Source: Octopus bimaculoides
Taxonomy: Eukaryota
Direction of reading: 5' to 3'
NCBI RefSeq assembly: GCF_001194135.2
Contig: NC_068990.1
Span: forward strand, 81,882,098 to 81,944,957
DNA length: 62,860 nucleotides
Numbering within the stretch: the first letter of the stretch is position 1; the number at the start of each line of letters is the position of its first letter. The notes beneath the pieces were generated by a model. That model was given only the letters and a program-made list of their open reading frames with translations. It searched no databases and was not told where the DNA came from. Of this stretch, positions 14,853 to 62,630 are shown one piece after another. The translations under genes were made by a program, and so were the position numbers.

Positions 14853-16110
14853 TATGTATATATATGTATATATATCATATATACTGCACTATATTTTTTC
14901 ATGTTGTGAATGAGAGAATTCAGTGTCCAGGTACAATACAATTTACAGTAATTTAGTTGCATAAAAATACATCTCAAATTTTACTTAAATATGAACAATT
15001 TCTTACGTATGCAGCCACATATATAAAATATGTATGATTTTGATACCTGCACAGTCATACAATGCTCATCAATTTCATAAAAGTATATTCATGTCATGAA
15101 AAGATTATCTCCATTTCTCTATGTATGCCTCTCTCTCTCTCTCTGTATGTATATGTATATATTTTCATATACACATATACACATATACATACAGGGGAAG
15201 AGACATTCACATACACATATTCATACAAGCATACATACATATATATCTTTGTGTGAACATGCGAGCATACACACATACACTCAGATACCTACAAGCAACA
15301 AATTTAGTTGGCTGAACTTTCCTGATGCCAGTTACTTCAGTAAAGTGAATGCTAAGTTACTGTTTTCTGTTAACAACCCCTTTACCATTCTCTAACTTCT
15401 TTATAATATGTGCTTCTTTAGCTTTCTATACACTGTACCAAAATCTTACCTCTCTGCTGCTACTGTTGCTGCTGATACGGTCCCTTTTGGATGGTTGGCA
15501 GACTGGATACTTAGATGATGGGTATAGTTTCTCCTTTACAGCCCTGCTGTGGGGATCTGCATTTAGTAACTAGTCAGTACTGAAGAAATATTTCCATGGT
15601 AACCAGAGAAAATGACAATTTCATGCAGCTGGTCTTAGACCTCAACCAATGATAAAGCTTCTTCTAAGTTGTGGTGAAGTCTTTGTATCATCAAAGTGGA
15701 ATGAAATCTTACCCCAGTCATGCTGCCTCATTCATTTTCAGTTGTGTGTGTGTGTTTCCTCCTGCCAACTTGGAAATAATGTGTTATTCTTCAATCACTA
15801 AAAAACATGCATTCTAGTAGGATTTAGCACTTTCTGTCTTTTTTTTTTTTGTATTATTTTTGTACATAGAAAATATAAATATAGATACATCTATATATAT
15901 ATCCATATCATATATAATAACAACAATAATAATAAATTGTCATTTTGTGGCAGTGGTTTTGTGACAAGCAACTACTAGAGGTGATTCAATGTGACTGCTA
16001 CACCACACTATTCTAGCAGTAGTGTGAAGTCAGGATTTTACCTTGCTTGTAGTACTACTTCACTGTCATCACTACCTCTGTTTTCTTCCTCTGCTGTATC
16101 AATTATTATC

Positions 16111-16489
16111 ATGGAGGAGAAGCGAGCGTACAGGCTCAGTCTCCATTCTTTAATGATAATAATTATTATTACAGTTGACTTAATGGCTATTGCTGATGCT
16201 TCACTTCCATCTGCACCTACGAAACTTACAATATCGCACATTGAATCTGAATCGGTTCAATTATCATGGGATAAAGCTAATACAGGAGATGTGTTATCAT
16301 ACATTATATTATATCGGCCATACAAAAGCAACAGGGAATTCAAGGAGATAGGTGATGTTAAAAAAACCAGGGGATATATAGTACATCCGCTCAAACCAAA
16401 CACCAGGTATGAATTTAAAGTTTTGGCCAAAAATAAAAATGGACATGGTCCTTCAAGTGAATCAGTATTGGGATTAACTGGCCCCACTG
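16111..16489 (+). CDS. Coding exon: signal peptide + one FN3 domain, similar to FN3 repeat 1 of LAR/PTPRD/PTPRS-type receptor tyrosine phosphatases; gene continues by splicing (phase-1 intron)
   Basis: ATG at 16111 is in a strong context (atcATGG), with an in-frame stop upstream at 15982. MEEKRAYRLSLHSLMIIIIITVDLMAIADA has a basic n-region, hydrophobic core and A-D-A cleavage motif. It is followed by LPSAPTKL...SVQLSW...YIILYRP...FKEI...LKPNTRYEFKVLAKNKNGHGPSSESV...TG, which carries the FN3 hallmarks (W of strand B, Y of strand C, L-x-P-x-T-x-Y-E-F-x-V-x-A-x-N-x-x-G-x-G-P-x-S). Donor ACTG|GTTAGT at 16489/16490; the ORF stops one codon into the intron. FN3 identity is confident; the LAR assignment is from remembered family pattern. 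Confidence 0.9.
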
Positions 16490-17294
16490 GTTAGTATGTA
16501 TTGTTTAAATTTTTTGTTTAATTTTTTTTTCTTTTGTTTTGTTTTAACATATCACAACATTCCTATAGAAATGGTTTACCTAGCTTACAAACACACAGGT
16601 GCACACACACACACATGCTCACTCACAGATACATCTCAAATCTTTATTGATTTTTGTTTGCTTTTTTCTTCAAGAGTTTCTGCATAAGCTATGTGGATCC
16701 CTCTCTCCCAAACCTTTCCCTACTGCTACCACATGTATTCTAATAAATAGATTGATGCTTGTCATTTGTTATTTTTATTATTATTATGAAAATGTTAGAA
16801 ATCTTCAATATATTTTCATTATGTTGGTATTGTGACAATAAAAGATTGTTATTGTGAAAAGAATATATAAAACCATCATCAACAACATCATCGTTCCCCA
16901 TACGCGGTTATAAATAATAAGACACGAAGAAAAGTTAGCTTTGTTGGTGATAAATATATCTTTGTTTCACACACGCAAAGTCTGGTTCTTAACTTTCATT
17001 TCAGGTTTTGCTATAATTTTATTTTTTCTGTATTCACCTGAAATCATGGGTGTTTATTTTTATTTCAAAAATTTGTATAAGGTTTATTCCTTCAAACACT
17101 CCCCTCTTTCCCCTTTTAGGTAATTAAGTAAAAAGTTAGGAATAGCTAAACGCTCATCCTGTATATCACCTTTTGGGGAGGAATTCTTGTGTATTTTGTT
17201 CTGTGTGCTGTGCGAAAGATTGGATTTTTTTTTCCTGTAAGATTGTATGTTGGTGTAGTTTAGTTTCAGTTGGGCCCCTAATTAAGTAAACTAT

Positions 17295-19729: not shown

Positions 19730-20075
19730 NNNNNNNNNNNNNNNNNNNNNNNNNNNNNNNNNNNNNNNNNNNNNNNNNNNNNNNNNNNNNNNNNNNNNNN
19801 NNNNNNNNNNNNNNNNNNNNNNNNNNNNNNNNNNNNNNNNNNNNNNNNNNNNNNNNNNNNNNNNNNNNNNNNNNNNNNNNNNNNNNNNNNNNNNNNNNNN
19901 NNNNNNNNNNNNNNNNNNNNNNNNNNNNNNNNNNNNNNNNNNNNNNNNNNNNNNNNNNNNNNNNNNNNNNNNNNNNNNNNNNNNNNNNNNNNNNNNNNNN
20001 NNNNNNNNNNNNNNNNNNNNNNAAATTGATAAACCTTTACCCTTTTAATTTGTAATAATTATATATATATATATA

Positions 20076-20473
20076 TACTCGTTTACTCTTTTACTTGTTT
20101 CAGTCATTTGACTGTGGCCATGCTGGAGCACCGCCTTTAGTCGAGCAAATCGACCCCAGGACTTATTCTTTGGATGCCTAGTACCTATTCTATCGGTCTC
20201 TTTTGCCGAACCACTAAGTTATGGTGACGTAAACACACCACCATCGGTTGTCAAGCGATGTTGAGGGGACAAACACAGACACACAGACATACATATATAT
20301 ATATATACATATATACGACAGGCCTCTTTCAGTTTCCGTCTACCAAATCCCCTCACAAGGCTTTGGTCGGCCCTACCAAAAGACACTTGCCCATGGTGCC
20401 ACGCAGTGGGAATGAACCCAGAACCATGTTGTTGGTTGCAAGCTACTTACCACACAGCCACCCCTGCGCCTAT
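20076..20473 (-). mobile_element. Full-length young SINE family A
   Basis: From tactcgtttactcttttacttgtttcagtc to cacagccacccctgcgcctat; nearly identical to 34520-34913 apart from a small internal deletion. Confidence 0.95.
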
Positions 20474-22280
20474 ATATATAATGTGTGTGTGTGTGTTTGT
20501 TCACATGTATACACAGTGTATTTTGACTTCAGGAAAGTATCTTTTGTAGCATATTGCCATATCTTTTGAATGTTAGGTGAGAAAATACTTTAATGAAATA
20601 TTTACAAAAGAACTAAATTCATCTTCTTGCCCTCCTTACTTTGTGGTGAGGGTGGTGCTGAACATGTTAGGGGTGGTGATGGTTCTGGTTGGCAGTGATG
20701 TTGGATGCAGCTGAATGGTTGCAGACACATGTATGTTTTTGTGTGAAAAGTATTGGGTGCTTGATGTTCAAAATTTTGTAACTATATTTTTACAATTATA
20801 TTTGAAATCAGCAGGACTGAGCCAATGAAGGAACCTCTACAAGGTTACTTTATCTGCTGGAAATACCAGTTAAATCTCCCTCATATCACTCAGGCAGTGG
20901 ATTGGCCAAAGCAAAATTTCTTTCCTATTTAGGAACAGTTGCTTACATTCCAAGTCAAATCTTTCTGAAGTCAACCTGTGTTTCATCTCCTGGAGATTGA
21001 TAAAATAAAGTACCAGTTAAATACTGGTGTTAATTTAAAATATTCCTATCATGCATCCCAGTTGTGAATGTAATTATAATAGCTGAAGACCATACTTGTC
21101 TTAAAACAATAAAATAAAAAAGACGCACAGATTAATGTAGTACTAGATAGACTATGTCTGAAATAAATGATGCTATGGTCATGTTTGAATGTCTTTGATC
21201 AGGAATTTAAATAAAAACTACAATCAATAGAATGATTTATCCTGTTTGTTGTTTTGTTTTGCTTCTCTTAAGAAAATTAATAAATCTTTAGGTTTAAGTT
21301 TTATTTCATAAGGTTTTGTTCCAGTGTTTAGTTCCAGTTAGTGCTGTAACATGGCATTTTAAGAAATAGCTATAGTTGAAAATTTTGTGAGAGTGTGTAT
21401 GTGCATGCATACTGAATGATTGTAATGTGTGTGTGTGTGTGTCCATGTACATGTTAACTGTTTGTATCTGTGTGTACATTATGGTTTGTGTTGTATGTTT
21501 GGATGTATGCATACATGGTGCTAATTAACTGAAGCTAAACATAATGTTGATGTTTAGCTTCAGGTCGGTCTTTTTAGATTCCTCTTGGCCTGCAACACCA
21601 AATAGCGTCCTTTTCTTTTTTTCAAGGCAGTAAGATGTAATTTGAGGAAGATTTGGCTGGTGCTATTTTTACAACTTGGGCAACCATGTTAAGAGGATCC
21701 ATCAGAGTATGTGTGTACATGCCTCTCAGTTTCCTGCATTGTGTCTCAGTTTAGATCTTGTCATGTCTGTCCATTTAATGCTTGTATCCACATTTTTTCT
21801 TGTGGCTTGTATGTACCATACCTTCATCATATATTTTTTCCAAAATTAAAAAAAATCCATTATTTTAACTTGATGAAAGCTCAAAAGGAATTAACGATTA
21901 TGCATTATTAGTGGGAAAAGAAAATGTGGCATCTATGTTAGAATCAAAATTAATTAACATTGTTACTTGGCTGCTTCTTATTTTATTGATACCAGAAGGC
22001 TTGATGGCAAATATGCTATAGTAGGACTTGAACTCTGAATGTAAAAGGTTGAAAGTAAATCAGCAATGCATTTTGTTCTCTTCTGTACCTATATCCTGAA
22101 CTTTGGTCATTGGTGTAAGCTACTCCTTGGCTCATTCATGATCAACCAACAACATGGTTATGGTTGCTTGATCTGTAAGAATAATAAAGAATGCTTCCTG
22201 AAGTCCCACTCTATTATCTTATAATGGGAAGGGCACTTTGGATAACTGTAGTACCTGATAGATTAGCTAAACAAAACAAA

Positions 22281-23792: not shown

Positions 23793-25394
23793 GTTCTCTC
23801 TCTCTCGCTCTCTCTCTCTGTGCATCCACTGCTGTAATGTAATGAGCACAATATTAACATTCCTATAGTTTATATAATTAATTACTTAGGCAATTGTAGG
23901 CTTCAAAACAGCTAATGCTTATATATATANNNNNNNNNNNNNNATATATATGGATAGATAGATAGATAGACAAGGAGGAGAATAATTTAAAACACTTATG
24001 CAAAATAAATTCTCTACAACCCAATCTTTTGTTGCACACTTGTTAAGTTAATTTATCTTCAAGTGTTTGATTTTGTTTATCATGTTAATATCATCTTTCT
24101 CTTGTTATTGGTCATCAAGTTATGTTAACCTTACTATTCAACAGAGAGACTGCAATTTATTGTAACATATAGTCTTGTCTTGTTAGAAATAGCAGTCAAA
24201 TCTCCTATCATTTAAAAAGAAAAACACATTGGATAATATAGTTCTAAATACCTTTTAAAAAATTAAAATTGTTGCAGGTAGAATGCATCTGATCATTGGC
24301 CTGCTAGATTAGAGTTAAACTGCAGTTAAATAACATTACTTCACTTGCAAAAGCTGTTAGTTTAACATAATATCGTTTCATTCTTTTACTGGTTTTAATA
24401 TCTGACTAGCCATGCTGGAGCACCTTATAGAGGGTCTTTACGCAATTAGTGAGCAGTGGCTATGTTGATTACATGTTTCCAACAAATCAGTCATTGCTTT
24501 ATTGCATTTACTTTGGTGAGAGTGATAAGGGAGTGTCTGAACAACACAGGCAGAACAAATGCATCACAGTATTTTAGTCTGAAAGCACCTCTTATCGACT
24601 TCTCTCATTGATGTTTATGTCTTCTGATATAACAACGAAACAGACACACACATTACACACATTTATGATGAGCTTTTACTCAGTTACCATTTACAGAATT
24701 CCACTTGCAAAGATTTGGTTGATCCAAGACACTATTTGCATAAGGTATGCGCAGTGGAATTGAAACCAAACCTCATAGCCTTGTTTGTACCCAATACTTG
24801 TTCACTGGTGCTTATTTTGAAAGGTAAAAGCTGACCATGGGATTCTTTTATGCGTTCCAGCCCAAAAGGCTGTGGCCATACTGGGCCACCATCATTAAAA
24901 TAAAGCTTACTAAATAGTGAAGTTAGGTTGGGCTTGTCTGGGATATTGAATTGTTTTAAATTTTCATGCCGTCTTTGTTATTAGAAAATTGAATCTGTCA
25001 TCAAAGTAACACATACAAACCAATAAGTTTACTGCACATGTAAGCTAAGCAATGTTTTGTGTATAGCGCTAAGTTGCAGTCTCTCTAGAATGGTGAGGTT
25101 AGACTGATCTTAATGATGGTTAACCAAAACTATGTCATTTTTATGAGAATTTTTGGGATGTACCCCACTCCACCACTATGATTCATTCCACAGCAAGACT
25201 ATATATGTTTTTAATATATATATATATATAAATATAAATATACTTTGTCATATACTGAATTGTTTATAATCCTAAGGACTATTTTATCGTTTGAATTCTC
25301 ATTTTATTTAATCATTACTAAGCTGGTGTTTTGATAAGTGCATGGAGCAGTGCAAGCATGCACAGACAGATTCATGCTTTCTTGTGTGTGTAGT

Positions 25395-25720: not shown

Positions 25721-26444
25721 TATTATTTGCAAAGTTTGGAATATTTTTTCCTTTGTTTGCTTTTATTCTTCGTTTTGTTTACTTTTCCAGTCTTGTAAGG
25801 TACCCTGGTTTTTTTCCCTTCTCTCTCTTTCTCTCACTCTCTTTCTCTCTCTCTCACTCTCTCTCTCTCTCTCACTCTCTCTCTCTCTCTCTTTCTTTCT
25901 TTCTCTCTCTCTCTCTCTTTCTACTGGACCCTTCCATTTTATCATGACTTTTTCTTTTTTACCATTCATGTCACCTCCTCCAGCCCAGAGAAATAAAAGT
26001 GAGTACTTAAACTGCCATTGTTTTCTGCTTTAGACTCTGTTCTGTTCTGGGTCACTCTGTCCACTGTTACTACTACTACTACTACTACTACTACTTATAA
26101 ACACCACCATCACCACCACTTCTTTTCAAGTCCACAGGTGGTCCTCCATTTCATGTCTTTATCACAGCCCTATTACTACTGCTGCTGCTACTTGCTATTG
26201 ACCACTATCTTTGTGGCTCTTTTGTTCTTAAACATCTGCCTATTTGCTGTATACTGCCACCATCTTTTAATTTTCCATCTTCTCTATTAATGTTTCTTCA
26301 TATTTTCATCAAACTCTCAGCACAAATGCAGCCCAGCATGACTACAATACACCTTTTATATCTATATATATCTATATATATCTATATATATATCTCTCCA
26401 TCTTCAGACAGTTTTTGTTTTCATTTTTATTAAATTCTTTTCAG

Positions 26445-28455: not shown

Positions 28456-28465
28456 NNNNNNNNNN

Positions 28466-33750: not shown

Positions 33751-33800
33751 AGGGTTTCAGATTCAAACATATACACACACATACATACATATATATACAT

Positions 33801-33971
33801 ATATACGACGGACTTCTTTCAGTTTCCGTCTACCAAATCCACTCACAAGGCTTTGGTCGGCCCGAGGCTATAGTAGAAGACACTTGCCCAAGGTGCCACG
33901 CAGTGGGAATGAACCCGGAACCATGTGGTTGGTAAGCAAGCTACTTACCACATAGCCACTCCTGCGCCTAT
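33801..33971 (-). mobile_element. Young SINE family A, 5' half only
   Basis: atatacgacggacttctttcagtttccg...cactcctgcgcctat; the 3' half is absent beyond the internal microsatellite. Confidence 0.93.
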
Positions 33972-34522: not shown

Positions 34523-34913
34523 TCTTTTACTCTTTTACTTGTTTCAGTCTTTTGACTGTGGCCATGCTGGAGCACCGCCTTTAGTCGAACAAATCAACCC
34601 CAGGACTTATTCTTTGGAAGCCTAGTACTTATTCTATCGGTCTCTTTTGCCGAACCGCTAAGTTACGGGGACGTAAACACACCAGCATTGGTTGTCAAGC
34701 GACGTTGGGGGAACAAACACATACATATATATATATATACATATATACGACTGGCTTCTTTCAGTTTCCGTCTACCAAATCCACACACAAGGCTTTGGTC
34801 GGCCCGAGGATATAGTAGAAGACACTTGCCCAAGGTGCCACGCAGTGGGACAGAACCCGGAACCATGTGGTTGGTAAGCAAACTACTTACCACACAGCCA
34901 CTCCTACGCCTAT
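34520..34913 (-). mobile_element. Full-length young SINE family A
   Basis: From tactcttttactcttttacttg to cactcctacgcctat, CpG-rich and flanked by TA runs. Confidence 0.95.
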
Positions 34914-35423
34914 ATATATATATATGAAACATTTGTGTTTCCATGCTTGCATGGATCAGACGGATCTTGGATAGCTAGGTGCCATTCCCGTCACTACCCC
35001 CTCAGCCATTTCCAAGTAATGTTATATTTCACCATCCCCAGACATGATTATATAGAAGAATCGAAACAAAGAACACCTCTTGCATGATAGTGACACTCAC
35101 TCACTCACCACTAATACGCGAAGTTACCGCAAGGGAACAGTAAAGCAAACATGCACACATGTACATATCAAGTTGATCGTTGGTGTAATCATGATGTTCT
35201 GGTGATCTTGTGAGCTAGCTTTCTTTATTTCCATTGATTTGTAAATATGCAATAGGCCAAGTATACATACTAATGCAAATATGTATGCATAATTTCTTCC
35301 ACACTGAAATTAATACTGCATGAATAAAGTTGTTAAACAGCTGTAATACTAAGGATGTCAGGTGGTTAAATATATATTCATTTTTCATAACTCCTGACTC
35401 TTATGGTTTATATATATTTATAT

Positions 35424-43929: not shown

Positions 43930-45740
43930 TCCATGTTTATGGGGGGTTAGACTGGTCATACTCAGTTAACACCGTATCTTTCTTTTGCCAACTCTTTTGT
44001 AAGGTTCAGCATCCTGAAGTTATCCTTCACCACTTTTGCTTATGTTTTCTTTAGTTTTCCTCTTTCATAGTTTCCTTTTGCCTGAATCTCTCATCACTTC
44101 TTCAATGTAGTTATCTCTCTTGTACACTGTATCTGATTTTCCTTAATCTCATGTTTTCTCTAAGCTCATCTAGATCTCACTAATGATACACACTACTAGC
44201 ATTATACATCCAGTGGAACACGCTTCATTTCTTTCTGGAATTTAAACATCTATATTGAGTGTCCATGACTCACTATTGTGTGGCATTTTAATTGCTACAC
44301 AAACATAATATAATCTACCTTTCATTTGAAGAAAGAATCCTCTCATTGGCAGAGCTAATATAAGCTCCCTTAACCTTTACTATTTTTTTAATTCTAATTT
44401 TGTATGCTTTCAGAGTATCCTTTGTCCTCTTCTTTTGATAAGGTCACCTAGCAGATGCTATCAACTAGTTTTTATAGCACTTGTCTGGTATAAGATGGAA
44501 TTATTTTACTTAGTGTTGGGGACTGCTGACTACTCCTGTGTGTCTTCCCCATATGGCCATTATTCACTTTCAGGCTGCCTTTGACCCTACTATACATCTC
44601 ATGCATTCATAGATCACACTGTGTGCACCATATGAAATTTGGACTGAATCCTTTTCTGTATATGAAACCTGATGACTGTGGAGTCATGTCTACTCACCAA
44701 AACCTCAGCCTTTAGTAAGTTTACTTTAAGGTCTCTTGATTCTAGATTTTGTTTTCACATCTGGAATTTCTACTCTATGTCCTCCACAATCTCCACAGTA
44801 AGTACTCCAGTCATAAGTATCTAGAGGTTTCCCATGGACAGCTGGTTTTAAACTGCTTTATTATAATTTGGAAGCAGGAGCAAAGTTGAAAATTAAGTTT
44901 TGAGGATTAGATACCTGCACACAAAATTCCTTACTGCATTGCTGGCTCTCACTTTGTTGAGTACTTAACAGTAAATGGTTTGCATCATTCTCAAACCATT
45001 CATATACTTCTAGTTTTCTTAGTGACCACTTAACTTGAGATTGTAGTATTCTATCAAAAACTTTCTTCAGGTCAGCAAATGCTATGTGGAGAGGTTTACA
45101 ATAGTTTCTAGTAGGAGAGAAAGAGAGAGAAAGAATCAGTAATATCTCCACTTGGCACAAACCCTGAATGCATCTCATGTAAACTGATTCTCCTTTTAAT
45201 TAGTTATACTAATTCTGGTACTTTCAAACTTCCAGTTTTCTGTAGTTACCTTTTCTACAAGATCCTTTGCCCTTGTAGCAGTTGATGATTATACTGTGAT
45301 GCCATTCATCTGGTATGACACCTTTCTCTATTATTTGGTTAACTCTGCAGGTGACTAGCTTGAGCCCTAGTTCCACAGATATTTTCAGCATCACTACAAC
45401 TATCTTTGATGAACCTGCTTCTTTCCTTCTCTTCATATCCTTAATGACCATTTTGGTCATTCGGCTGTCCATTGCAGTAGCTGATCCCATTGTGGATACA
45501 AGTGGTACACTTCTTCCTTTCATACATTCTCAACATTCATCATTCTCAACATTCATCATTCTCTCATGCAAACATTTCCAAGTCTCTTTTTTTTATGTAT
45601 TTTGTCAGAATCAGTTGTACTGATGAGCCGACCATTATCATTTCAAACCCAAATTTTACAAAGTTCATTTTGACACTCTGCTTTGCAAGAATTTCTGTGG
45701 TAGCTGGCATGCATATAGCTAGTTTATACTAGAAGGATCC
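43930..45740 (-). mobile_element. Decayed RTE-clade non-LTR retrotransposon (ORF2/RT remnant with frameshifts, stops and deletions)
   Basis: Minus-strand peptides DMKRRKEAGSSKIVVVMLK...GVIPDEWHHSIIINCYKGKG...GNYR (RTE pre-RT motifs) and LHIAFADLKKVFDRI...WSLRKL (RT domain, F-x-D-L-x-K-A-F-D). Confidence 0.88.
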
Positions 45741-48030: not shown

Positions 48031-48650
48031 CAGGGTGTCCCCCCAAAATTGACATTATTTGAAATGTGTATATATGAGTAACTATGTCCTAAGTAAATGA
48101 AATTCAATAAGTTTCATGTTTTTTTTAAATCAAAATTCAAACAAGAGATTCAGAGTGATGTAGATTTTCTAACTGATTTCACAAATGTTCAACATGCGTA
48201 TTGCCTGTGACACAGCACACACCAAATCGGCAGTTCAGCTCCTGCCAAACATCCTGTAGTGTATCTTGTGTAACATTTTCCAGTGCCTCAGGGTGCAGAA
48301 AGAGAGGGTGGGTATAGACCAGTCCTTTTACATGGCCCCATAGAAAAAAATCACAAGGTGTCAGATCAGGTGAACATTTCAACAGCACATTGTCATTATC
48401 ACTGGGACACCTGATCCATCTCATTGAGATAACCCAGCACATTCAGCCTCCAGTGAGGTGGAGCCCCGTCTTATTGAAAAATGAAGTGTTCATGCTCATT
48501 TGCAGTGAGCTTATCAAATAACCAGTCATGTTTTCCTTAAAGAAAACAGTCCATAAAGACGATTCTTCATTAAACTTTGAGATCATTTGAGCAAGAACTG
48601 ACTATATTATTAAACTATGAAATGATGTTAATTTTGGGGAGGACACCCTG
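48031..48650 (-). mobile_element. Internally deleted Tc1/mariner transposon with both TIRs and transposase C-terminus
   Basis: TIRs cagggtgtccccccaaaattgacattattt / aaatgatgttaattttggggaggacaccctg|ta. The minus ORF contains SPDLTPCDFFLWGHVKGLVY (third catalytic-motif region). Confidence 0.93.
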
Positions 48651-49469
48651 TATATTGTAGTGGAATGTGGCAAAGAATTTTAAGTTATATATGGTTTATG
48701 TTTAGTAGTACTGATTAATATATTTGATTTGAGTATTTCTAAAGATAAGAAATGCATTTGACAGAAGAGTGACAGATTTATGGTTACACATTACAATGTA
48801 TGATTTCAGTTACTGTCATTGTATTAACAAATACTCTTCCCATATTCTTCGAATCTTTAAAAACCTCTTTCATTTTAATGTCTCTTTCTCTCTCAAAAAT
48901 TTAGTAGTTTTGTTTTATCTTATTCTAACATAATTTCATATCAGATACAATAACATTTATTAATTCTCCATTAAGCAATTGATTGCTGCAATACGAGATA
49001 TTGACCAGTTACTGTTGATAGTATTTTCCTCATTGCTAAGTACTGTTCCTTTCTATAAAATGCAACTCAGCCATCTATCAATACTCCATAAATTAAGTCT
49101 TGATATTTAATTGTTGTTTCATATTTTCCACAAAATAAAGATTTGTCTGGACTGAAAAACCTATTGGAAACCTATTCCCTTGTTACTTTGATGTGGGGAT
49201 TGATTTATAAATGCAATTAGATACAAATTGAAATTCAATGATTCATCCCCCACTCGCTCTGTATACACATGTAATATGTGTGTGTATGTATGTATATATA
49301 TATATATATATATATNNNNNNNNNNNNNNNNNNNNNNNNNNNNNNNNNNNNNNNNNNNNNNNNNNNNNNNNNNNNNNNNNNNNNNNNNNNNNNNNNNNNN
49401 NNNNNNNNNNNNNNNNNNNNNNNNNNNNNNNNNNNNNNNNNNNNNNNNNNNNNNNNNNNNNNATAGGAA

Positions 49470-49800
49470 AATGAAAAATAATAATAAGGCAGAATGCTAA
49501 ACTGGAAGCATATTTTAATAAAGATTTCTCTAACAGGCTTTCATTGCGAAGCAAATTTTTCGAGAAGAGGGAGAATGAAAATGTTTTTTACAAAGAAGTA
49601 CAAAATGAAGAAAATAATATATAAAAAAATAAATATACCAATACATTATATTGTCTTTGAGCTTTTGAAGTTCAACGGTAGTTCATGCATATAATGGTTG
49701 GAAAAATAAGGATGCATGAGAATTGAGAGTTGTGTTAGGTTTAAAAAAAGGTTAAAAGTTTGTGTTAAGCAGGAAGTGTGGTGTCAAAACAGGAAGTGTG
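49470..49800 (-). mobile_element. Probable Penelope-like terminal remnant
   Basis: On the minus strand there are tandem cacttcctg motifs, a T-rich tract and ctcgaaaaatttgcttcgcaatgaaagcctgtt. Weak support. Confidence 0.35.
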
Positions 49801-49842
49801 TAAGAGGAGACAAAAAAACATTTGTCTCCCCTTACACACACT

Positions 49843-50154
49843 GTACTTATTCTATCGGCCTCTTTAGCCGAACCGCTAAGTTACGGGGATGTAAACACAC
49901 CAGCATCGGTTATCAAGCGATGTTGGGGGGACACAGACACAAACATACACACACACACACACATACATATATATGTATACATATATACGACAGACTTCTT
50001 TCAGTTTCCGTCTACCAAATCCACTCACAAGGCTTTGGTTGGCCCGAGGCTATAGTAGAAGACACTTGCCCAAGGTGCCACGCAGTGGGAGATGAACCCG
50101 AAACCATGTGGTTGGTAAGCAAGCTACTTACCACACAGCCACTCCTGCACCTAT
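49843..50154 (-). mobile_element. Young SINE family A lacking its last ~100 bp
   Basis: gtacttattctatcggcc...cactcctgcacctat. Confidence 0.93.
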
Positions 50155-51669
50155 ATGTATACATATATATAATATATATATTTTTATGTATATGTACATG
50201 ATATTGGAAAGTCATCTGAGATATATGTTTTATGATATTGTTTAGGATAATTTATTGTTGAAATTTTAAATTTGATTCTATGCTGAATCTGATGGAATAC
50301 AAGCACAAAATTCTGCCTGCTTTCAATGGACAGGAGAAATGATATTCTATGATGTTTGTACATTTTTAGGTGCATTAACGATGTAAGTGTTATGAAATGG
50401 CTATGAACCCTATTTCAAAACTGAGTTGTAAACTCAGCGTGCTTGTAGCTTACAACCTTGTATTTACACTTACAGACATAGTGTAATTAAGTTGCTTTTG
50501 TATCAGATTACAAATCTGATGCTATTCTCATTTCAAACACCAATTTGTTCTTTTATTTCCTGTCTCACATTGATGCTCATAATGTGTAATGTAATTTACA
50601 TTAAACTTTAGCCTTTAATTCATAACTTGCAAATCTGGTGTTCAGTCTCTGAGTTAATCTGGTTGTAACTAAGAGGTTATCTGATTAGCATTAAGGTCAT
50701 GTTAACTACCAAACATACACAAACACGTGCTTTGTTCAGCTTAGCATATGCAGTATTTGAAATAATCTAAGCTTTTCTCTGCATCTGTAATTTTGTAAAG
50801 GTATTGATTGTATTGACTCATCTCAGTATTGAATAATCTGCAAAGAGTTATGTCATTTATTCATAGGTAAATGTTTTCTTGCATTATCAAATTAGATTGT
50901 GTTCGATAATTTTTACATTGAATTTATATATATTTAAACTTTGTCTTACTAAAGCAATTTACTAAAACTTAAATGAAAAATGTGATTTGTGATTTTTATA
51001 TATTGGGCCATATGTAATACTTTATTACTATATATATATCTATCTATATATATATTTTTTTTTTTTCTGCACTTACTCACACATGCACACACTCCTTATT
51101 TGTTATGCATATACAAGACATCTCTAAGCAGGCTTTATGTTATAGAAATTTAAATTTTGTTGTTTTAATATTTCTATTGTACTTATGTAATTACTTAATT
51201 ATTTTGATGCAAAGACATTTGGGCTCCTCCTTGGCTGAGTAGGAAGACTTTACTTTATATCCCAAATGAAATTCAATTTATTCAGATCTACTTTATATGA
51301 TTTTATAAACATCTTTACCATTGTTTTATGTTTCCATGTTTCTATATTTTCTATAGAACTTCTGTATTTTGTTTTCCCTTCCCTCATTTTCTTTCATCTC
51401 ATCATCATTTTGTGTCTTTCATCACCAAAATCCTGCAAATGACCTTCACATTAGCATCACAGATGACGCTTTTAGTTGTATGCCCTTACCTCTGCACTAC
51501 CATAAAGTAGTAGTATTTATATTTACATGTTAGCATGTGTGAGTCAAAAGAGAGAGAGAGAGAGAGTGAGTGTATATGTGTGCACTATGTAATGTATGTA
51601 TGTTAACAGGGTAATATATTTTGGGCAAATTATTCTTCCTACCTTTTAGTTAGTTTTGTTTCTGCTCAT

Positions 51670-52060
51670 GATAGTGCATTCATCCCATGGCCTTATTTGC
51701 TCTGATTGTGCTGTGTTCTCGTTCAAAGATCTATTGGCACAACATTGACCATTTCCTGCCCTTATAATTGGCCTTCAGTTGGTCCAGATTTTTGAAGTAT
51801 AGGATTTCTATACACACTTTCTTTCAGATGATCCCACAAAAGGAAGTCTCAACAATTCAGATCAGGGCTCAGCACAGGCCATGGGTTCCGGTTTGGCAGA
51901 GAGAAGGACCAAACCTGCCGCTTCTCCTGCAGCCAACGGAGGCAAATGTCAACACTTTGAGGGATTACAACTTCCTGAATGAACCACAGACGAGCTTTTG
52001 TCAATGTCTATGTCTTCGTCTGGTAGCTGGCTAAAGCTTCCCTAATCATCACTTACATCT
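51670..52060 (-). mobile_element. Tc1/mariner transposase pseudogene fragment
   Basis: Minus-strand translation LWFIQEVVIPQSVDICLRWLQEK...NPWPVLSPDLNC*DFLLWDHLKESVYRNP corresponds to the degenerate WFQQD...WP-x-x-SPDLN-x-x-DF-x-LW motif. Confidence 0.88.
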
Positions 52061-54027
52061 ACCCTTCCGATGCCACTCAGTGTTGCTGTTATATTTGAAG
52101 AAGACTGGATATCTTATACAGCCTTAACTTAACTTAGTGCACTTAACACTATATATATATATATATAACCTTCTGCATGCTGAAGGAACATTATCGGTGC
52201 TCTTGTATTTGCAATGTCCCCCATTGTTCTTTAAATGGTGGTCGACATTTCTTTGCATTGTAAAGCATCCATTGTAAAAGTTTATTTAATTAATTTATGT
52301 GGAAGGTGTTACTTCATGGGGAACTTGATCTAGTAATCATGGACTAATATCTCCTTTATATATGCATATTTGTGATTTATTCTCATTAAAGTACCCTGTG
52401 AATTTGTATTCACTACAAAATACTTCAAAATAAATCAATATGAAACGAAAAAAAAAAAAGAGAAGAAAAAATGGTTAGACCAATTAAGTTCTTAGTATAT
52501 GTAGGTATTTGATGAATTAAGACACATTTGTGCACACACACACACACACACGCACATACATACATACATACATAAACAAACAAGCTGTGTATAATTTCCT
52601 GAATGCACATCATATCAATCATAGCTTGAAAAGTCATCATCAAAATAGCATTGATGGAGATAATAGTCCACAATTACAAAGATCAAAAGAAACGACCAAA
52701 AAAAAATAATAAAAATAAAGTAATAATACTCATCTTTTCATTAATTTTAAAATTTTTTCCTTTTTTTTTCTGTGTATGTATGCATCTTGGCTTTTTACAC
52801 CAAATATCTCAGAATTATGTTACAATATTTATGTTTTACAATCCAGAGTAAAATTTTGTAAAACTAGAATCTAGTTTTAGTTAGAATTTAGAAAATCCAA
52901 AGCAATAAATATTTATAAAAAAGAGAAAAAAAAAGAAAGAAAAAAAAGAAAGAGCTCGTTTGGTTTTATAATCTCACATTTGAGAAGCACAATGTTAACT
53001 AGTGATATATTTTTTATTTATTTTTGCAAATTTTGTTCTACTTTGAGTTTAGTGTTTATCTTTTGTCATCAATATTACCATTTCTTTTTTAACTGGTAAT
53101 CACAGATATCCTCATTCTCATTGAAAAGTTTTGCTAATGAGGTTAACAAAAGTAATGATTTTCTGTGGTGCTTTTATTATTATTTTTTTTTCTTTTGCTT
53201 ATCAGACTTCCTCCATTCCCATCCCAACCCCCTTCCCATCTCATAATCTTTCTATGGTTTGTTAATCTTGTATTTTTAATAATAGAAAGAAATCAGTTCT
53301 TGTTGGACTATTGTTGTCTCTATATATTTTTAATAAATGGAAGCTGTTAGTAATATTTATTGAAGAAAAAAGAAATTAAAGTTGTTTTGTAATATTTTAT
53401 GAAATAATGTTATGAGTTTCATTTATTTGAGATTATATTATTCAATTTATATGATTAACCATTACTTAATTCGTGAGCAATAAACTAAATTTTAATACAG
53501 ACCCTGCTTTATATCAATGTACAATTATTATTTAAATTCTCTCAGAACTGTTATTCTTTGATGATAACCATTTAAAATGGAGGCCAAAACATATCTTTGT
53601 GTAATGCAGATATTTGTAATTAAATAGTAAATGCAGTTGTGAGCTTTTGAAAAAAATTCATATTTCTAATTTTCTAATGCAACTTTATGTACATTTTCAA
53701 CAATTTTTTATATTCAAATAAAGCAAAAAAAAAAAAAAAAATGTAAAGAAAAACAGCAATACAAATAAACTTTCTTTTGAGTTCTGGTATGTTATCAATT
53801 TCGATTACTCCTCCCAGCTCCTCATTCAAATTATGTGTTCTCCTTTGTCCTGTACTGTGAAGATAGAGTTGGTTAAGGCCAAACAAAAACATTAGAAGAC
53901 ATACAGACCTAAAGTTGAAAATATGCTTTTAATTTAAAATTGTAGTTATATATTTTGATAGATGTATGTTTGAATTTGGATATTATTATTATTATTATTA
54001 TTATTAATCATTATTATTATTATCATT

Positions 54028-62329: not shown

Positions 62330-62422
62330 GTTGGTACTTATTCTATTGGTCTCTCCTGGCTGACCTACTAAGTTATAGGGATATAAACTAACCAGCACTG
62401 GCTGTCAAGCAGTGGTAGTGGA

Positions 62423-62468
<46 letters not shown>

Positions 62469-62630
62469 TATACATTGTAGGCTTCCCTCAGTTTCTGTCT
62501 GCCAAACCCACTCCCAAGGCTTTTTTCAGCCCAGAAATGTAGTAGAAGACACTTGCTCAAGCTGCCATGCAGTGGGATTAAACCCAGAGCCATATGGTTG
62601 GGAAGCAGATATCTTAACAGTGTAGGCACG
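62330..62630 (-). mobile_element. SINE family A, older copy
   Basis: ggtacttattctattggtctc...gtcaagc...cagtttctgtctgccaaacccactc...gtagtagaagacacttgctcaag. Confidence 0.85.

What the first reader, a model, noticed from the sequence alone, without database searches (positions are those of the whole stretch)
16111..16489. Signal peptide fused directly to a LAR-type first FN3 domain: an Ig-less LAR-like ectodomain
Seen: one exon carries ATG, a signal peptide and a complete FN3 domain, ending in a phase-1 donor. Known: type IIa RPTPs (LAR/PTPRD/PTPRS, Drosophila Lar) have three Ig domains between the signal peptide and FN3-1. Those Ig domains bind heparan/chondroitin sulfate and trans-synaptic partners. 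This FN3 follows the LAR FN3-1 pattern (LP..P..L...SV.L.W...Y.I.Y.P...F.EI...L.P.T.YEF.V.A.N..G.GP.S...TG) but looks diverged. Inference: it is either (a) an alternative first exon inside a Lar locus giving an Ig-less isoform (C. elegans PTP-3B is a precedent for an Ig-less isoform), or (b) a separate, possibly cephalopod-specific LAR-derived paralog made by exon duplication and capture of a signal peptide.
Basis: partly seen in the sequence, partly recalled or inferred. Interest (0 to 1): 0.7.

Follow-up and report, generated by a model that had tools for sequence, protein, structure and literature searches.

The report
Small secreted protein from Lar exon
The flagged stretch is the real first coding exon of a small cephalopod gene that makes a secreted protein of about 180 residues with one fibronectin-III domain copied long ago from the first such domain of the Lar receptor phosphatase; it is not an Ig-less Lar receptor.

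Summary
Window 16111-16489 (+) carries an ATG in Kozak context, a 30-residue signal-peptide-like leader, a complete FN3 domain (Pfam fn3, E 8.7e-17) and a phase-1 GT donor.

The FN3 is specifically like Lar FN1. A profile of 95 canonical Lar FN1 exons scores it 87 bits, against at most 55 bits for 3391 control FN3 domains. The donor position and phase match canonical invertebrate Lar FN1 exons. The canonical acceptor is gone, and the predicted signal-peptide cleavage site sits exactly there.

It is not a Lar isoform. Orthologues exist in cuttlefish: one genomic contig and three spliced Sepia esculenta larval RNA contigs. They begin with the same MEEK..Y.L leader. They splice the FN3 exon to an 18-nt micro-exon and then to a last exon with a stop codon.

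Both downstream exons are in the window: a 15-nt micro-exon at 25984-25998, and a last exon from 51828 with its stop at 51980-51982. The product is 182 aa: signal peptide, one FN3 domain and a disordered basic tail. It has no Ig, transmembrane or phosphatase part.

Window versus Sepia dN/dS is 0.26 (FN3 0.16). What the protein does (soluble ligand or decoy) is inference.

The parts
15568..16110 (+). 5' untranslated part of exon 1 (minimum extent; the transcription start was not located). It includes conserved blocks at 15568-15716 and 15937-16064, and a minimal uORF ATGTGA at 15989-15994.
   Evidence: Sepia esculenta transcript L019 aligns colinearly to 15568-15716 (77.6%) and 15937-16064 (70%). 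L019 31-1053 is colinear with the Sepia-like genomic contig L018, so no intron lies in the roughly 660 nt upstream of the ATG there. The stretch 15917-16235 has 1 substitution in 319 nt against the sister species.
16111..16200 (+). Start codon and 30-residue signal-peptide-like leader, MEEKRAYRLSLHSLMIIIIITVDLMAIADA. The predicted cleavage after ADA falls exactly where canonical Lar FN1 exons begin.
   Evidence: The chance control gives 0.05-0.1%. The MEEK..Y.L start and a hydrophobic leader are conserved in Sepia. AF2 models a helix at residues 3-27. The canonical acceptor AG|CA is absent here.
16201..16489 (+). FN3 domain homologous to the FN1 exon of Lar / type IIa RPTPs. It ends with one base of a split codon (phase 1).
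   Evidence: Pfam fn3, E 8.7e-17. Lar FN1 profiles score it 79-87 bits, against at most 55 bits for about 3400 control FN3 domains. PDB sequence and fold hits are PTPdelta and LAR FN1. AF2 pLDDT is above 90. dN/dS against Sepia is 0.16.
16490..16495 (+). 5' splice site of intron 1 (GTTAGT).
   Evidence: It is identical in the sister species. Its position and phase match canonical invertebrate Lar FN1 exons, e.g. L006 G|GTTAGT. The Sepia transcript leaves the genome at the homologous point.
25939..26064 (+). Conserved block that holds a 15-nt micro-exon at 25984-25998 (CCCAGAGAAATAAAA, coding A-Q-R-N-K plus the first base of the next codon). The acceptor is cctcctccAG at 25982-25983 and the donor GTGAGT at 25999-26004. 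Phase is 1 on both sides.
   Evidence: The block is 82.6% identical over 132 nt to L018 19791-19915, at the same distance (about 9.3-9.5 kb) from exon 1. The homologous 18 nt in L018 (19834-19851) are present in the spliced transcript L019 1054-1071. There is no transcript evidence from the window's own species.
51828..51982 (+). Coding part of the last exon: N-DPTKGSLNNSDQGSAQAMGSGLAERRTKPAASPAANGGKCQHFEGLQLPE plus the stop TGA at 51980-51982. The acceptor is ctttcAG at 51826-51827, phase 1.
   Evidence: L019 1088-1256 aligns to 51856-52034 at 74%. The tail alignment with Sepia shows a conserved dibasic site and the motif AASPA.NGGKCQHFEGL. AF2 models the tail as disordered.
51983..52034 (+). 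Start of the 3' untranslated region (minimum extent). An AATAAA lies near 52430, ahead of an A-rich tract.
   Evidence: Homology to the Sepia transcript continues to 52034. Sequence.

Best explanation
Window 16111-16489 is the coding part of exon 1 of a small protein-coding gene on the + strand.

**Gene model.**
- Exon 1 runs from 15568 or further upstream to 16489. It holds a long 5'UTR, the ATG, a signal peptide and one FN3 domain.
- Intron 1 is about 9.5 kb.
- A 15-nt micro-exon lies at 25984-25998.
- Intron 2 is about 25.8 kb.
- The last exon starts at 51828, with its stop at 51980-51982.

**Product.** The spliced product is 182 aa, or 177 aa if the micro-exon is skipped. It consists of a cleavable leader, one FN3 beta-sandwich and a basic, disordered tail of about 55 residues. 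The tail ends in a conserved Cys-containing motif that follows a dibasic site. There is no membrane anchor and no phosphatase, so the protein should be secreted and soluble.

**Origin (inferred).** An ancestor of coleoid cephalopods duplicated the FN1 exon of the Lar (type IIa RPTP) gene. The copy kept its phase-1 donor but lost its acceptor. It gained an upstream start codon and signal peptide that end exactly at the old exon boundary, and it came to splice to two unrelated short exons.

**Function (inferred, not shown).** It probably acts outside the cell as a free FN3 module. It could be a ligand or decoy for whatever binds the Lar FN1 face, or for a partner of its own. The conserved C-terminal peptide may add a second activity.

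**Shown versus inferred.** Shown: the sequence features, the homology, the splicing in Sepia and purifying selection. Inferred: splicing in the window's own species, secretion, the exon-duplication route and the function.
For: **Exon anatomy and FN3.**

**Start codon and leader.**
- The leader is not chance: 0.05-0.1% of positions pass the crude rule.
- It is conserved in two Sepia lineages: MEEKQSYWLCFFTLAVVTS..A|VPSAP.
- In-frame stops lie upstream in both lineages.

**Transcripts.**
- L019-L021 are Sepia esculenta larval RNA-seq contigs. SRR25114244 is named in PMC10442824, and the SRR239361xx series in PMC10571815.
- They are colinear with genomic L018 through the 5'UTR and exon 1. They then continue into an 18-nt exon found 9.3 kb downstream in L018, and into a tail with a stop codon.
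- Window homologues of both downstream exons have AG/GT sites and matching phase, and give one open frame of 182 codons.
- Window versus Sepia protein identity is 54% from Met to the C-terminus.

**Selection.** dN/dS is 0.26 overall and 0.16 in the FN3.

**Lar FN1 origin.**
- 40-41% identity to human PTPRD and LAR FN1.
- Per-domain PDB scores are 49.5 and 45.9 bits for FN1, against 5-21 bits for Lar FN2-FN4 and at most 21.5 bits for titin domains.
- Lar FN1 profiles built without these sequences give 79 and 87 bits for the window and 101-104 bits for Sepia, against at most 53-55 bits for about 3400 control FN3 domains.
- The donor position and phase equal those of canonical Lar FN1 exons in L006, L007 and L017.
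- The leading fold matches are PTPdelta and LAR FN1, rmsd 1.0-1.2 A.

**No other Lar exon in the window.** tblastn with 149 large FN3/Ig proteins, Pfam on all + strand ORFs of at least 35 aa, tblastx against a canonical Lar locus, and targeted Ig3/FN2 queries all found nothing else.
Against: - No transcript from the window's own species or its sister was available. The junctions 16489>25984 and 25998>51828 rest on homology with Sepia.
- Between the window and its close sister species the FN3 shows 7 non-synonymous and 3 synonymous changes (omega about 0.7). One replaces the conserved Pro of G-x-G-P. This could mean relaxed constraint in this lineage.
- No SignalP-type predictor was run. The leader contains an Asp and a longish c-region.
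- FN3 domains are short. The designed consensus FN3con scores 44 bits against this domain, so part of the Lar FN1 resemblance is closeness to the FN3 consensus.
- The AF2 alignment contained Lar FN1 sequences, which biases the fold match.
- The cephalopod's own canonical Lar FN1 exon was not identified, so the duplication is not dated or placed.
- Function is entirely inferred.
Confidence: 0.8

Rival explanations
1. Ig-less Lar isoform. The exon is an alternative first exon inside the Lar locus and splices on to FN2...PTP exons, giving a receptor phosphatase without Ig domains.
For: The domain is Lar FN1-like and ends in the canonical phase-1 donor, so it is frame-compatible with a Lar FN2 exon. 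C. elegans ptp-3 has a second isoform, PTP-3B, with its own localisation and functions (PMC7927192). That PTP-3B lacks the Ig domains is from my own knowledge. Cephalopod introns are long, so Lar exons could lie beyond the window.
Against: Three independently assembled Sepia esculenta transcripts carry the short form, which ends in a stop codon and a 3'UTR. The window conserves that micro-exon and terminal exon, with the stop. There is no Ig3, FN2 or PTP exon in 16 kb upstream or 46 kb downstream, nor in the 10-kb flanks of L018.
Confidence: 0.04
2. Ordinary internal FN1 exon of the canonical Lar gene. The real acceptor is the AG at 16173-16174 (ttattattacAG|TT, also phase 1), the upstream Ig3 exon lies beyond the window, and the ATG and 'signal peptide' are an accident of AT-rich intron sequence.
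For: An AG in the right phase does lie 27 nt upstream of the domain. The hydrophobic core of the leader is encoded by an ATA/ATT run typical of local introns.
Against: - In canonical Lar genes the acceptor sits immediately before (A)LPKPP. Here it is absent in both the window and Sepia lineages.
- The Sepia transcript runs unspliced through the leader and about 660 nt of 5'UTR.
- The MEEK start is conserved.
- Identity to canonical FN1 exons is 33-45%, whereas those exons are 43-77% identical to one another.
- Seven amino-acid changes against a sister species only about 4% diverged do not look like a core receptor domain.
Confidence: 0.02
3. The gene is real in cuttlefish but is decaying or non-functional in the window's lineage (a unitary pseudogene in the making).
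For: Omega is about 0.7 between the window and its sister species, and the sister has Pro>Leu in the conserved GxGP turn. No expression evidence exists for this lineage. The window domain scores lower than Sepia's on the Lar FN1 profile, 87 against 101-104 bits.
Against: All three coding exons are open. All four splice sites and the stop are intact. There are no indels in the exon, while the flanks have many. The 5'UTR and leader are nearly invariant between the two close species (1 change in 319 nt). Ten substitutions are too few to tell omega 0.7 from 0.3.
Confidence: 0.08
4. The FN3 does not descend from Lar. It comes from another neural IgSF/FN3 protein (contactin, Dscam, sidekick, titin-like), and its resemblance to Lar FN1 only reflects closeness to the FN3 consensus.
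For: Contactin-1, Dscam, integrin beta4 and the designed FN3con all give whole-chain scores of 44-56 bits. Foldseek E-values for many FN3 domains lie within one order of magnitude of the Lar hits.
Against: There is a margin of about 30 bits over 3391 control domains on a profile that did not include these sequences. The Sepia orthologue, which is less derived, scores even higher. The exon end matches in position and phase. Motifs beyond the generic FN3 core are shared with Lar FN1: (S/A)LP..P, W-D-x-x-N, KEI, T-R-(G)-Y.
Confidence: 0.1

Closest known systems
First FN3 domain (FN1) of type IIa receptor tyrosine phosphatases (Lar, PTPRF/LAR, PTPRD, PTPRS)
   Same: It is the closest sequence and fold relative: 40-41% identity to the human domains, and PTPdelta and LAR FN1 lead the PDB hits (rmsd 1.0-1.2 A). 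The domain is encoded by a single exon whose 3' end has the same position and phase as in invertebrate Lar genes. In vertebrates FN1-FN2 is the binding site for NGL-3 (PMC4881023).
   Different: It stands alone. There are no Ig domains, no further FN3 repeats, no transmembrane segment and no PTP domains. It has its own start codon and signal peptide in place of the exon's acceptor. It is more diverged than canonical FN1 exons are from one another.
Irisin / FNDC5 (a soluble single-FN3 signalling molecule)
   Same: The working form is a single free FN3 domain outside the cell. The irisin structure (4lsd) is among the top fold matches, at 28-31% identity.
   Different: From my own knowledge, irisin is shed from a membrane-anchored precursor. 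The protein here has no membrane anchor and would be secreted directly. There is no specific sequence relationship, and the origin (a Lar exon) is different.
C. elegans PTP-3B
   Same: It is a product related to the Lar family that lacks the Ig domains.
   Different: PTP-3B is still a transmembrane phosphatase made from the ptp-3 locus (PMC7927192). From my own knowledge it starts within the FN3 array rather than at FN1. The gene here encodes no phosphatase.
Regulated micro-exons with highly conserved flanks (for example the mini-exons meA and meB of LAR-RPTPs)
   Same: A 15/18-nt exon that preserves the frame sits in a 132-nt block. That block is more conserved between octopod-like and cuttlefish genomes (82.6%) than the coding exons are (70-74%).
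   Different: Its position (after the FN3, before the tail) matches none of the known LAR-RPTP mini-exons. Alternative use has not been shown: the three Sepia contigs all include it.

Membership tests
Type IIa RPTP (LAR/PTPRD/PTPRS, Drosophila Lar) | Three N-terminal Ig domains after the signal peptide | tested here: not met
   The leader runs directly into the FN3 in the window and in Sepia transcripts. No Ig exon lies in 16 kb upstream.
Type IIa RPTP (LAR/PTPRD/PTPRS, Drosophila Lar) | An array of several FN3 repeats (FN2 onward) | tested here: not met
   The Sepia transcript ORF has one FN3 followed by a 50-aa tail and a stop. The window has no second FN3.
Type IIa RPTP (LAR/PTPRD/PTPRS, Drosophila Lar) | A transmembrane segment and two cytoplasmic PTP domains | tested here: not met
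   The spliced ORF ends at 51980-51982 after a hydrophilic, disordered tail. No PTP domain hit appears in any + strand ORF of at least 35 aa.
Type IIa RPTP (LAR/PTPRD/PTPRS, Drosophila Lar) | FN1-type sequence | tested here: met
   79-87 bits on Lar FN1 profiles, against at most 55 bits for about 3400 control FN3 domains. Per-domain PDB scores favour FN1 over FN2-FN4 by at least 25 bits.
Canonical Lar FN1 exon | A phase 1-1 exon: acceptor immediately before (A)LPxxP, donor after TGxxG | tested here: inconclusive
   The donor is met (G|GTTAGT, the same position and phase as L006, L007 and L017). The acceptor is not met: CT stands where AG should be, and the nearest AG is 27 nt upstream.
Pfam fn3 (PF00041) | Score above the gathering threshold over the full domain | tested here: met
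   61.6 bits against a 25-bit cut-off, profile positions 1-81 of 84. The AF2 beta-sandwich has pLDDT above 90.
Classically secreted proteins | An N-terminal cleavable signal peptide and no other membrane anchor | tested here: inconclusive
   The leader passes a crude n/h/c rule that 0.05-0.1% of window positions pass. The leader type is conserved in Sepia. AF2 models a helix at 3-27, and the rest of the protein has no hydrophobic segment. No dedicated predictor and no experiment were available.
Prohormone / neuropeptide precursors | A signal peptide, dibasic cleavage sites flanking a conserved short peptide, often a C-terminal Gly for amidation | tested here: inconclusive
   A conserved RR/KR site precedes the most conserved part of the tail, (T/N)K.AASPA.NGGKCQHFEGL. 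There is only one such site and no amidation signal. A folded FN3 domain in a precursor would be atypical.

The most novel reading that the evidence does not exclude
Coleoid cephalopods carry a lineage-specific soluble 'free FN1' of Lar. It would be a secreted decoy or ligand that tunes Lar-type receptor signalling in the developing nervous system. Its activity would be set by a deeply conserved, regulated micro-exon, and it might release a conserved C-terminal peptide after dibasic cleavage. The gene would have been born by exon duplication plus de novo gain of a signal peptide exactly at the old splice boundary.
Probability: 0.15. Interest if true: 0.75.

Novelty: new variant of a known kind. 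Interest (0 to 1): 0.45.

Why it matters
**Gene birth by exon shuffling.** This is a clean, datable example. One exon of an ancient synaptic receptor gene became an independent secreted protein. The old acceptor site was converted into a signal-peptide cleavage site, and the old donor was reused to splice into new exons.

**A possible extracellular regulator.** It is conserved from an octopod-like genome to cuttlefish and is expressed in cuttlefish hatchlings. That makes it a candidate cephalopod-specific regulator. If it competes for partners of the Lar FN1 face, it bears on how cephalopods diversified their neuronal cell-surface signalling.

**A caution for annotators.** A 'signal peptide plus Lar-like FN3' exon should not be chained onto a Lar gene model.

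Tried and rejected
1. **First protein-database searches.** The word-indexed search with the 126-aa peptide found only one relative, a sister-species genomic ORF. The exhaustive representative search ranked giant multi-FN3 proteins by summed score and was useless for placing the domain. I reused its hits as about 3400 control FN3 domains.

2. **TATA-box idea.** I first took the TATA-like microsatellite near 15880-15915 as a promoter. I dropped this when the Sepia transcript showed a 5'UTR reaching at least 540 nt upstream.

3. **Two-exon model.** I first built a model joining 16489 directly to 51828 (177 aa). I revised it after finding the conserved micro-exon. Skipping remains possible because it keeps the frame.

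4. **Other functional elements.**
   - Rfam over the whole window gave no hit.
   - The conserved 15917-16235 block folds somewhat better than shuffles (z -3.35), but I did not pursue an RNA element.
   - tRNA scan: none.

5. **Minus strand.** Only selected long ORFs were put through Pfam, with no hits. The minus strand was not scanned exhaustively.

6. **Cephalopod canonical Lar FN1 exon.** I tried to find it among canonical hits by looking up source samples.
   - P0230 turned out to be an earthworm.
   - P0218 and P0182 come from unidentified assemblies.
   - The attempt was abandoned.

7. **Sister species.** The runs SRR118693xx could not be identified from the literature.
Full report
**1. 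The observation**

The window is AT-rich (about 31% G+C), full of microsatellites and interspersed repeats, and contains 1110 N.

At 16111 there is an ATG in a good Kozak context (A at -3, G at +4). The frame stays open for 126 codons plus one base. It ends at ...ACT G|GTTAGT, a phase-1 donor with GT at 16490-16491. Residues 34-119 match Pfam fn3 at 61.6 bits, E 8.7e-17.

The first 30 residues are MEEKRAYRLSLHSLMIIIIITVDLMAIADA. They have the charged, hydrophobic and A-x-A layout of a signal peptide. The hydrophobic core is encoded by an ATA/ATT run, which is common here, so I ran a control. A crude signal-peptide rule applied to every position of the window is met at only 0.05-0.1% of positions.

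**2. Is the FN3 really Lar FN1-like?**

Against PDB sequences, the best single-domain matches are FN1 of PTPRD (49.5 bits) and of LAR (45.9 bits). FN2-FN4 of the same chains score 5-21 bits, and individual titin domains score at most 21.5 bits. The designed consensus domain FN3con scores 44 bits, so part of the resemblance is generic. Identity to the two human FN1 domains is 40-41% with one single-residue gap.

I then collected single-exon ORFs of canonical Lar FN1 from many animals. Source names among them include 'tyrosine-protein phosphatase Lar-like', 'receptor-type tyrosine-protein phosphatase delta' and 'netrin-G3 ligand'. I built profiles that excluded the window sequence and its orthologues.

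| Profile | Window domain | Best control FN3 | Controls scored |
|---|---|---|---|
| 11-sequence profile | 79.2 bits | 53.4 bits | 3375 |
| 95-sequence profile | 86.9 bits | 55.1 bits | 3391 |

On the 95-sequence profile the cuttlefish orthologues score 101-104 bits.

In three canonical invertebrate loci (L006, L007, L017) the FN1 exon runs from AG|CA-LPKPP to ...TGELG|GT, phase 1 at both ends. The window exon ends at the same position and phase, and even has the same GTTAGT as L006. The canonical acceptor is missing: CT stands where AG should be. The predicted leader cleavage, ADA|SLP, falls exactly at the old exon start.

An AF2 model has a confident FN3 (pLDDT above 90). Its best PDB fold matches are PTPdelta and LAR FN1, at rmsd 1.0-1.2 A. 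The input alignment contained Lar FN1 sequences, and many other FN3 domains follow closely.

**3. Surroundings**

Nothing else Lar-like is in the window.
- tblastn with 149 very large FN3/Ig proteins hit only this exon.
- Pfam on all + strand ORFs of at least 35 aa found only this fn3.
- tblastx against a canonical Lar locus found nothing more. In that locus (L017) the Ig3 exon lies about 500 nt upstream of FN1, and the two halves of FN2 lie 1.2 and 4.3 kb downstream.
- Targeted Ig3 and FN2 queries found nothing more.

**4. A close sister species**

Five genomic contigs from runs SRR118693xx are about 94% identical to window 15240-16890. The exon is open there too, and the donor is intact.

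Divergence is uneven:
- 15917-16235 (5'UTR plus leader): 1 substitution in 319 nt.
- The FN3: 10 in 289 nt, of which 7 are non-synonymous and 3 synonymous (omega about 0.7).
- The downstream intron: 9.5%.

**5. The decisive relatives**

A profile search seeded with invertebrate FN1 exons brought up two much closer proteins, at 62-63% identity.

- **P0291** is a genomic ORF on a 114-kb contig (L018).
- **P0274** lies on three Logan contigs (L019-L021) from SRR25158137, SRR25114244 and SRR23936177. SRR25114244 is listed as whole-larva RNA-seq of the cuttlefish Sepia esculenta in PMC10442824. The SRR239361xx series belongs to the same project (PMC10571815).

Both Sepia sequences begin MEEKQSYWLCFFTLAVVTS...A|VPSAP. 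The start codon and a hydrophobic leader are therefore conserved, while the leader's sequence has drifted, as signal peptides do.

Transcript L019 is colinear with genomic L018 from position 31 to 1053. That stretch is about 660 nt of 5'UTR plus the coding part of exon 1. L019 leaves the genome exactly at the homologous donor. Its ORF is 170 aa: leader, FN3, a 50-residue tail, then a stop.

**6. The rest of the gene in the window**

L019 aligns to four parts of the window:
- 15568-15716 and 15937-16064 (5'UTR);
- 16112-16478 (coding exon 1);
- 51856-52034.

At 51826-51827 there is a ctttcAG acceptor in phase 1. The frame runs to a TGA at 51980-51982.

A second conserved island lies between these exons. 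Window 25939-26064 is 82.6% identical to L018 19791-19915. Both lie 9.3-9.5 kb downstream of exon 1.

- In L018 the island contains CCTCCAG|CCCAGAGGATAAGTGAAA|GTGAGT. Those 18 nt are present in the transcript between exon 1 and the tail.
- The window has CCTCCAG|CCCAGAGAAATAAAA|GTGAGT, a 15-nt micro-exon at 25984-25998, again phase 1 on both sides.

Joining 16111-16489, 25984-25998 and 51828-51982 gives one open frame of 182 codons. It gives 177 codons if the micro-exon is skipped, and the frame is kept either way.

The window and S. esculenta proteins align from Met to the C-terminus at 54% identity. The tail is modelled as disordered and matches no Pfam family. Its end is conserved: an RR/KR site followed by K.AASPA.NGGKCQHFEGL.

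Codon comparison of window versus Sepia gives dN/dS of 0.26 overall, 0.16 in the FN3 and 0.47 in the tail, with dS saturated. The two Sepia lineages give 0.28. The gene has been under purifying selection over the long term.

**7. What it is**

It is a small gene with three coding exons. It encodes a secreted protein of about 16.5 kDa and pI about 9.6 after leader removal. The protein is made of one Lar FN1-derived FN3 domain and a short tail.

The simplest history is duplication of the Lar FN1 exon in an ancestor of coleoid cephalopods. The copy lost the acceptor, gained an upstream start and signal peptide ending at the old boundary, and reused the old phase-1 donor to splice into new short exons. 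That route is inferred.

Function is also inferred. A free FN3 module outside the cell could be a ligand or a decoy. In vertebrates FN1-FN2 of LAR-RPTPs is the NGL-3 binding site (PMC4881023). Irisin is a known case of a single soluble FN3 acting as a signal and is among the fold matches. The conserved peptide after a dibasic site, and the micro-exon with flanks more conserved than the coding sequence, hint at processing and regulated splicing. Neither has been shown.

**8. Rivals**

- **Ig-less Lar receptor isoform.** Contradicted by the Sepia transcripts and by the conserved terminal exon.
- **Canonical internal FN1 exon using the AG at 16173-16174.** Contradicted by four things: the unspliced 5'UTR in Sepia, the conserved start, the missing canonical acceptor, and the level of divergence from canonical FN1 exons. 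The window domain is 33-45% identical to them, while they are 43-77% identical to one another.
- **Decay in the window's lineage.** Cannot be excluded, given omega of about 0.7 on ten substitutions and no transcript. But every exon, splice site and the stop are intact.
- **A non-Lar origin of the domain.** Unlikely given the profile margin and the shared exon end.

**9. Limits**

- No transcript from the window's own species was available.
- No dedicated signal-peptide predictor was run.
- The organism of the window and of its sister species was not identified. I call it octopod-like only from the depth of divergence to Sepia and the style of the sequence.
- The cephalopod canonical Lar locus was not located.
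- The minus strand was only partly screened.
- I could not check whether public cephalopod annotations already carry this gene as an uncharacterised protein. No paper describing it turned up.

Noticed in passing
window 25939-26064: A 132-nt block around the 15-nt micro-exon is 82.6% identical between the window and a Sepia-like genome. That is higher than the gene's coding exons (70-74%). This pattern is typical of regulated micro-exons, but alternative use has not been shown.
   Followed up: partly
window 15917-16235: The 5'UTR plus leader is almost invariant against the sister species (1 substitution in 319 nt), while the FN3 has 10 in 289 and the intron 9.5%. As RNA the stretch folds better than shuffles (z -3.35). 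No Rfam family matches.
   Followed up: partly
window 15989-15994: A minimal upstream ORF (ATGTGA) lies inside a 20-mer, GATTCAATGTGACTGCTACAC, that is conserved in the Sepia esculenta 5'UTR. It could be a translational control element.
   Followed up: no
window 51931-51979: The C-terminal tail has a conserved dibasic site (RR here, KR in Sepia) followed by the best-conserved tail segment, K.AASPA.NGGKCQHFEGL, which holds the single Cys of the mature protein. It could be a released peptide or a disulphide-dimerisation site.
   Followed up: partly
window, e.g. 10154-10498, 20181-20480, 33767-33971, 34625-34925, 49710-50198, 62334-62607: An interspersed repeat of about 320 nt is present in at least 12 copies on both strands, at 71-95% identity. 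ARAGORN finds no tRNA-like head.
   Followed up: partly
window 44864-45529 (-) and 48182-48442 (-): These ORF fragments have motifs that recall a non-LTR reverse transcriptase (..AFADLKKVFDRI..) and the tail of a mariner-type transposase (..SPDLTPCDFFLWG..). Neither reached a Pfam hit at E<=0.01, so they remain leads from memory only.
   Followed up: partly
L001-L005 (sister species), homologous to window 16451: In the sister species the conserved Pro of the FN3 G-x-G-P turn is Leu (GHGPSS > GRGLAS). This is one of 7 amino-acid changes in 96 residues at about 4% neutral divergence.
   Followed up: partly
window 10850-10906, 11724-12312, 19730-20022, 23930-23943, 28456-28465, 49316-49462: These are assembly gaps (runs of N, 1110 bases in all). 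Four lie inside the gene's introns. Small exons hidden in them cannot be excluded.
   Followed up: no
L017 9151-9516, 10034-10324, 11595-11735, 14668-14916: A canonical invertebrate Lar locus from an unidentified ENA assembly shows the compact layout: an Ig3 exon, the FN1 exon about 500 nt later, then FN2 split into two exons. It served here as a reference for exon boundaries.
   Followed up: yes
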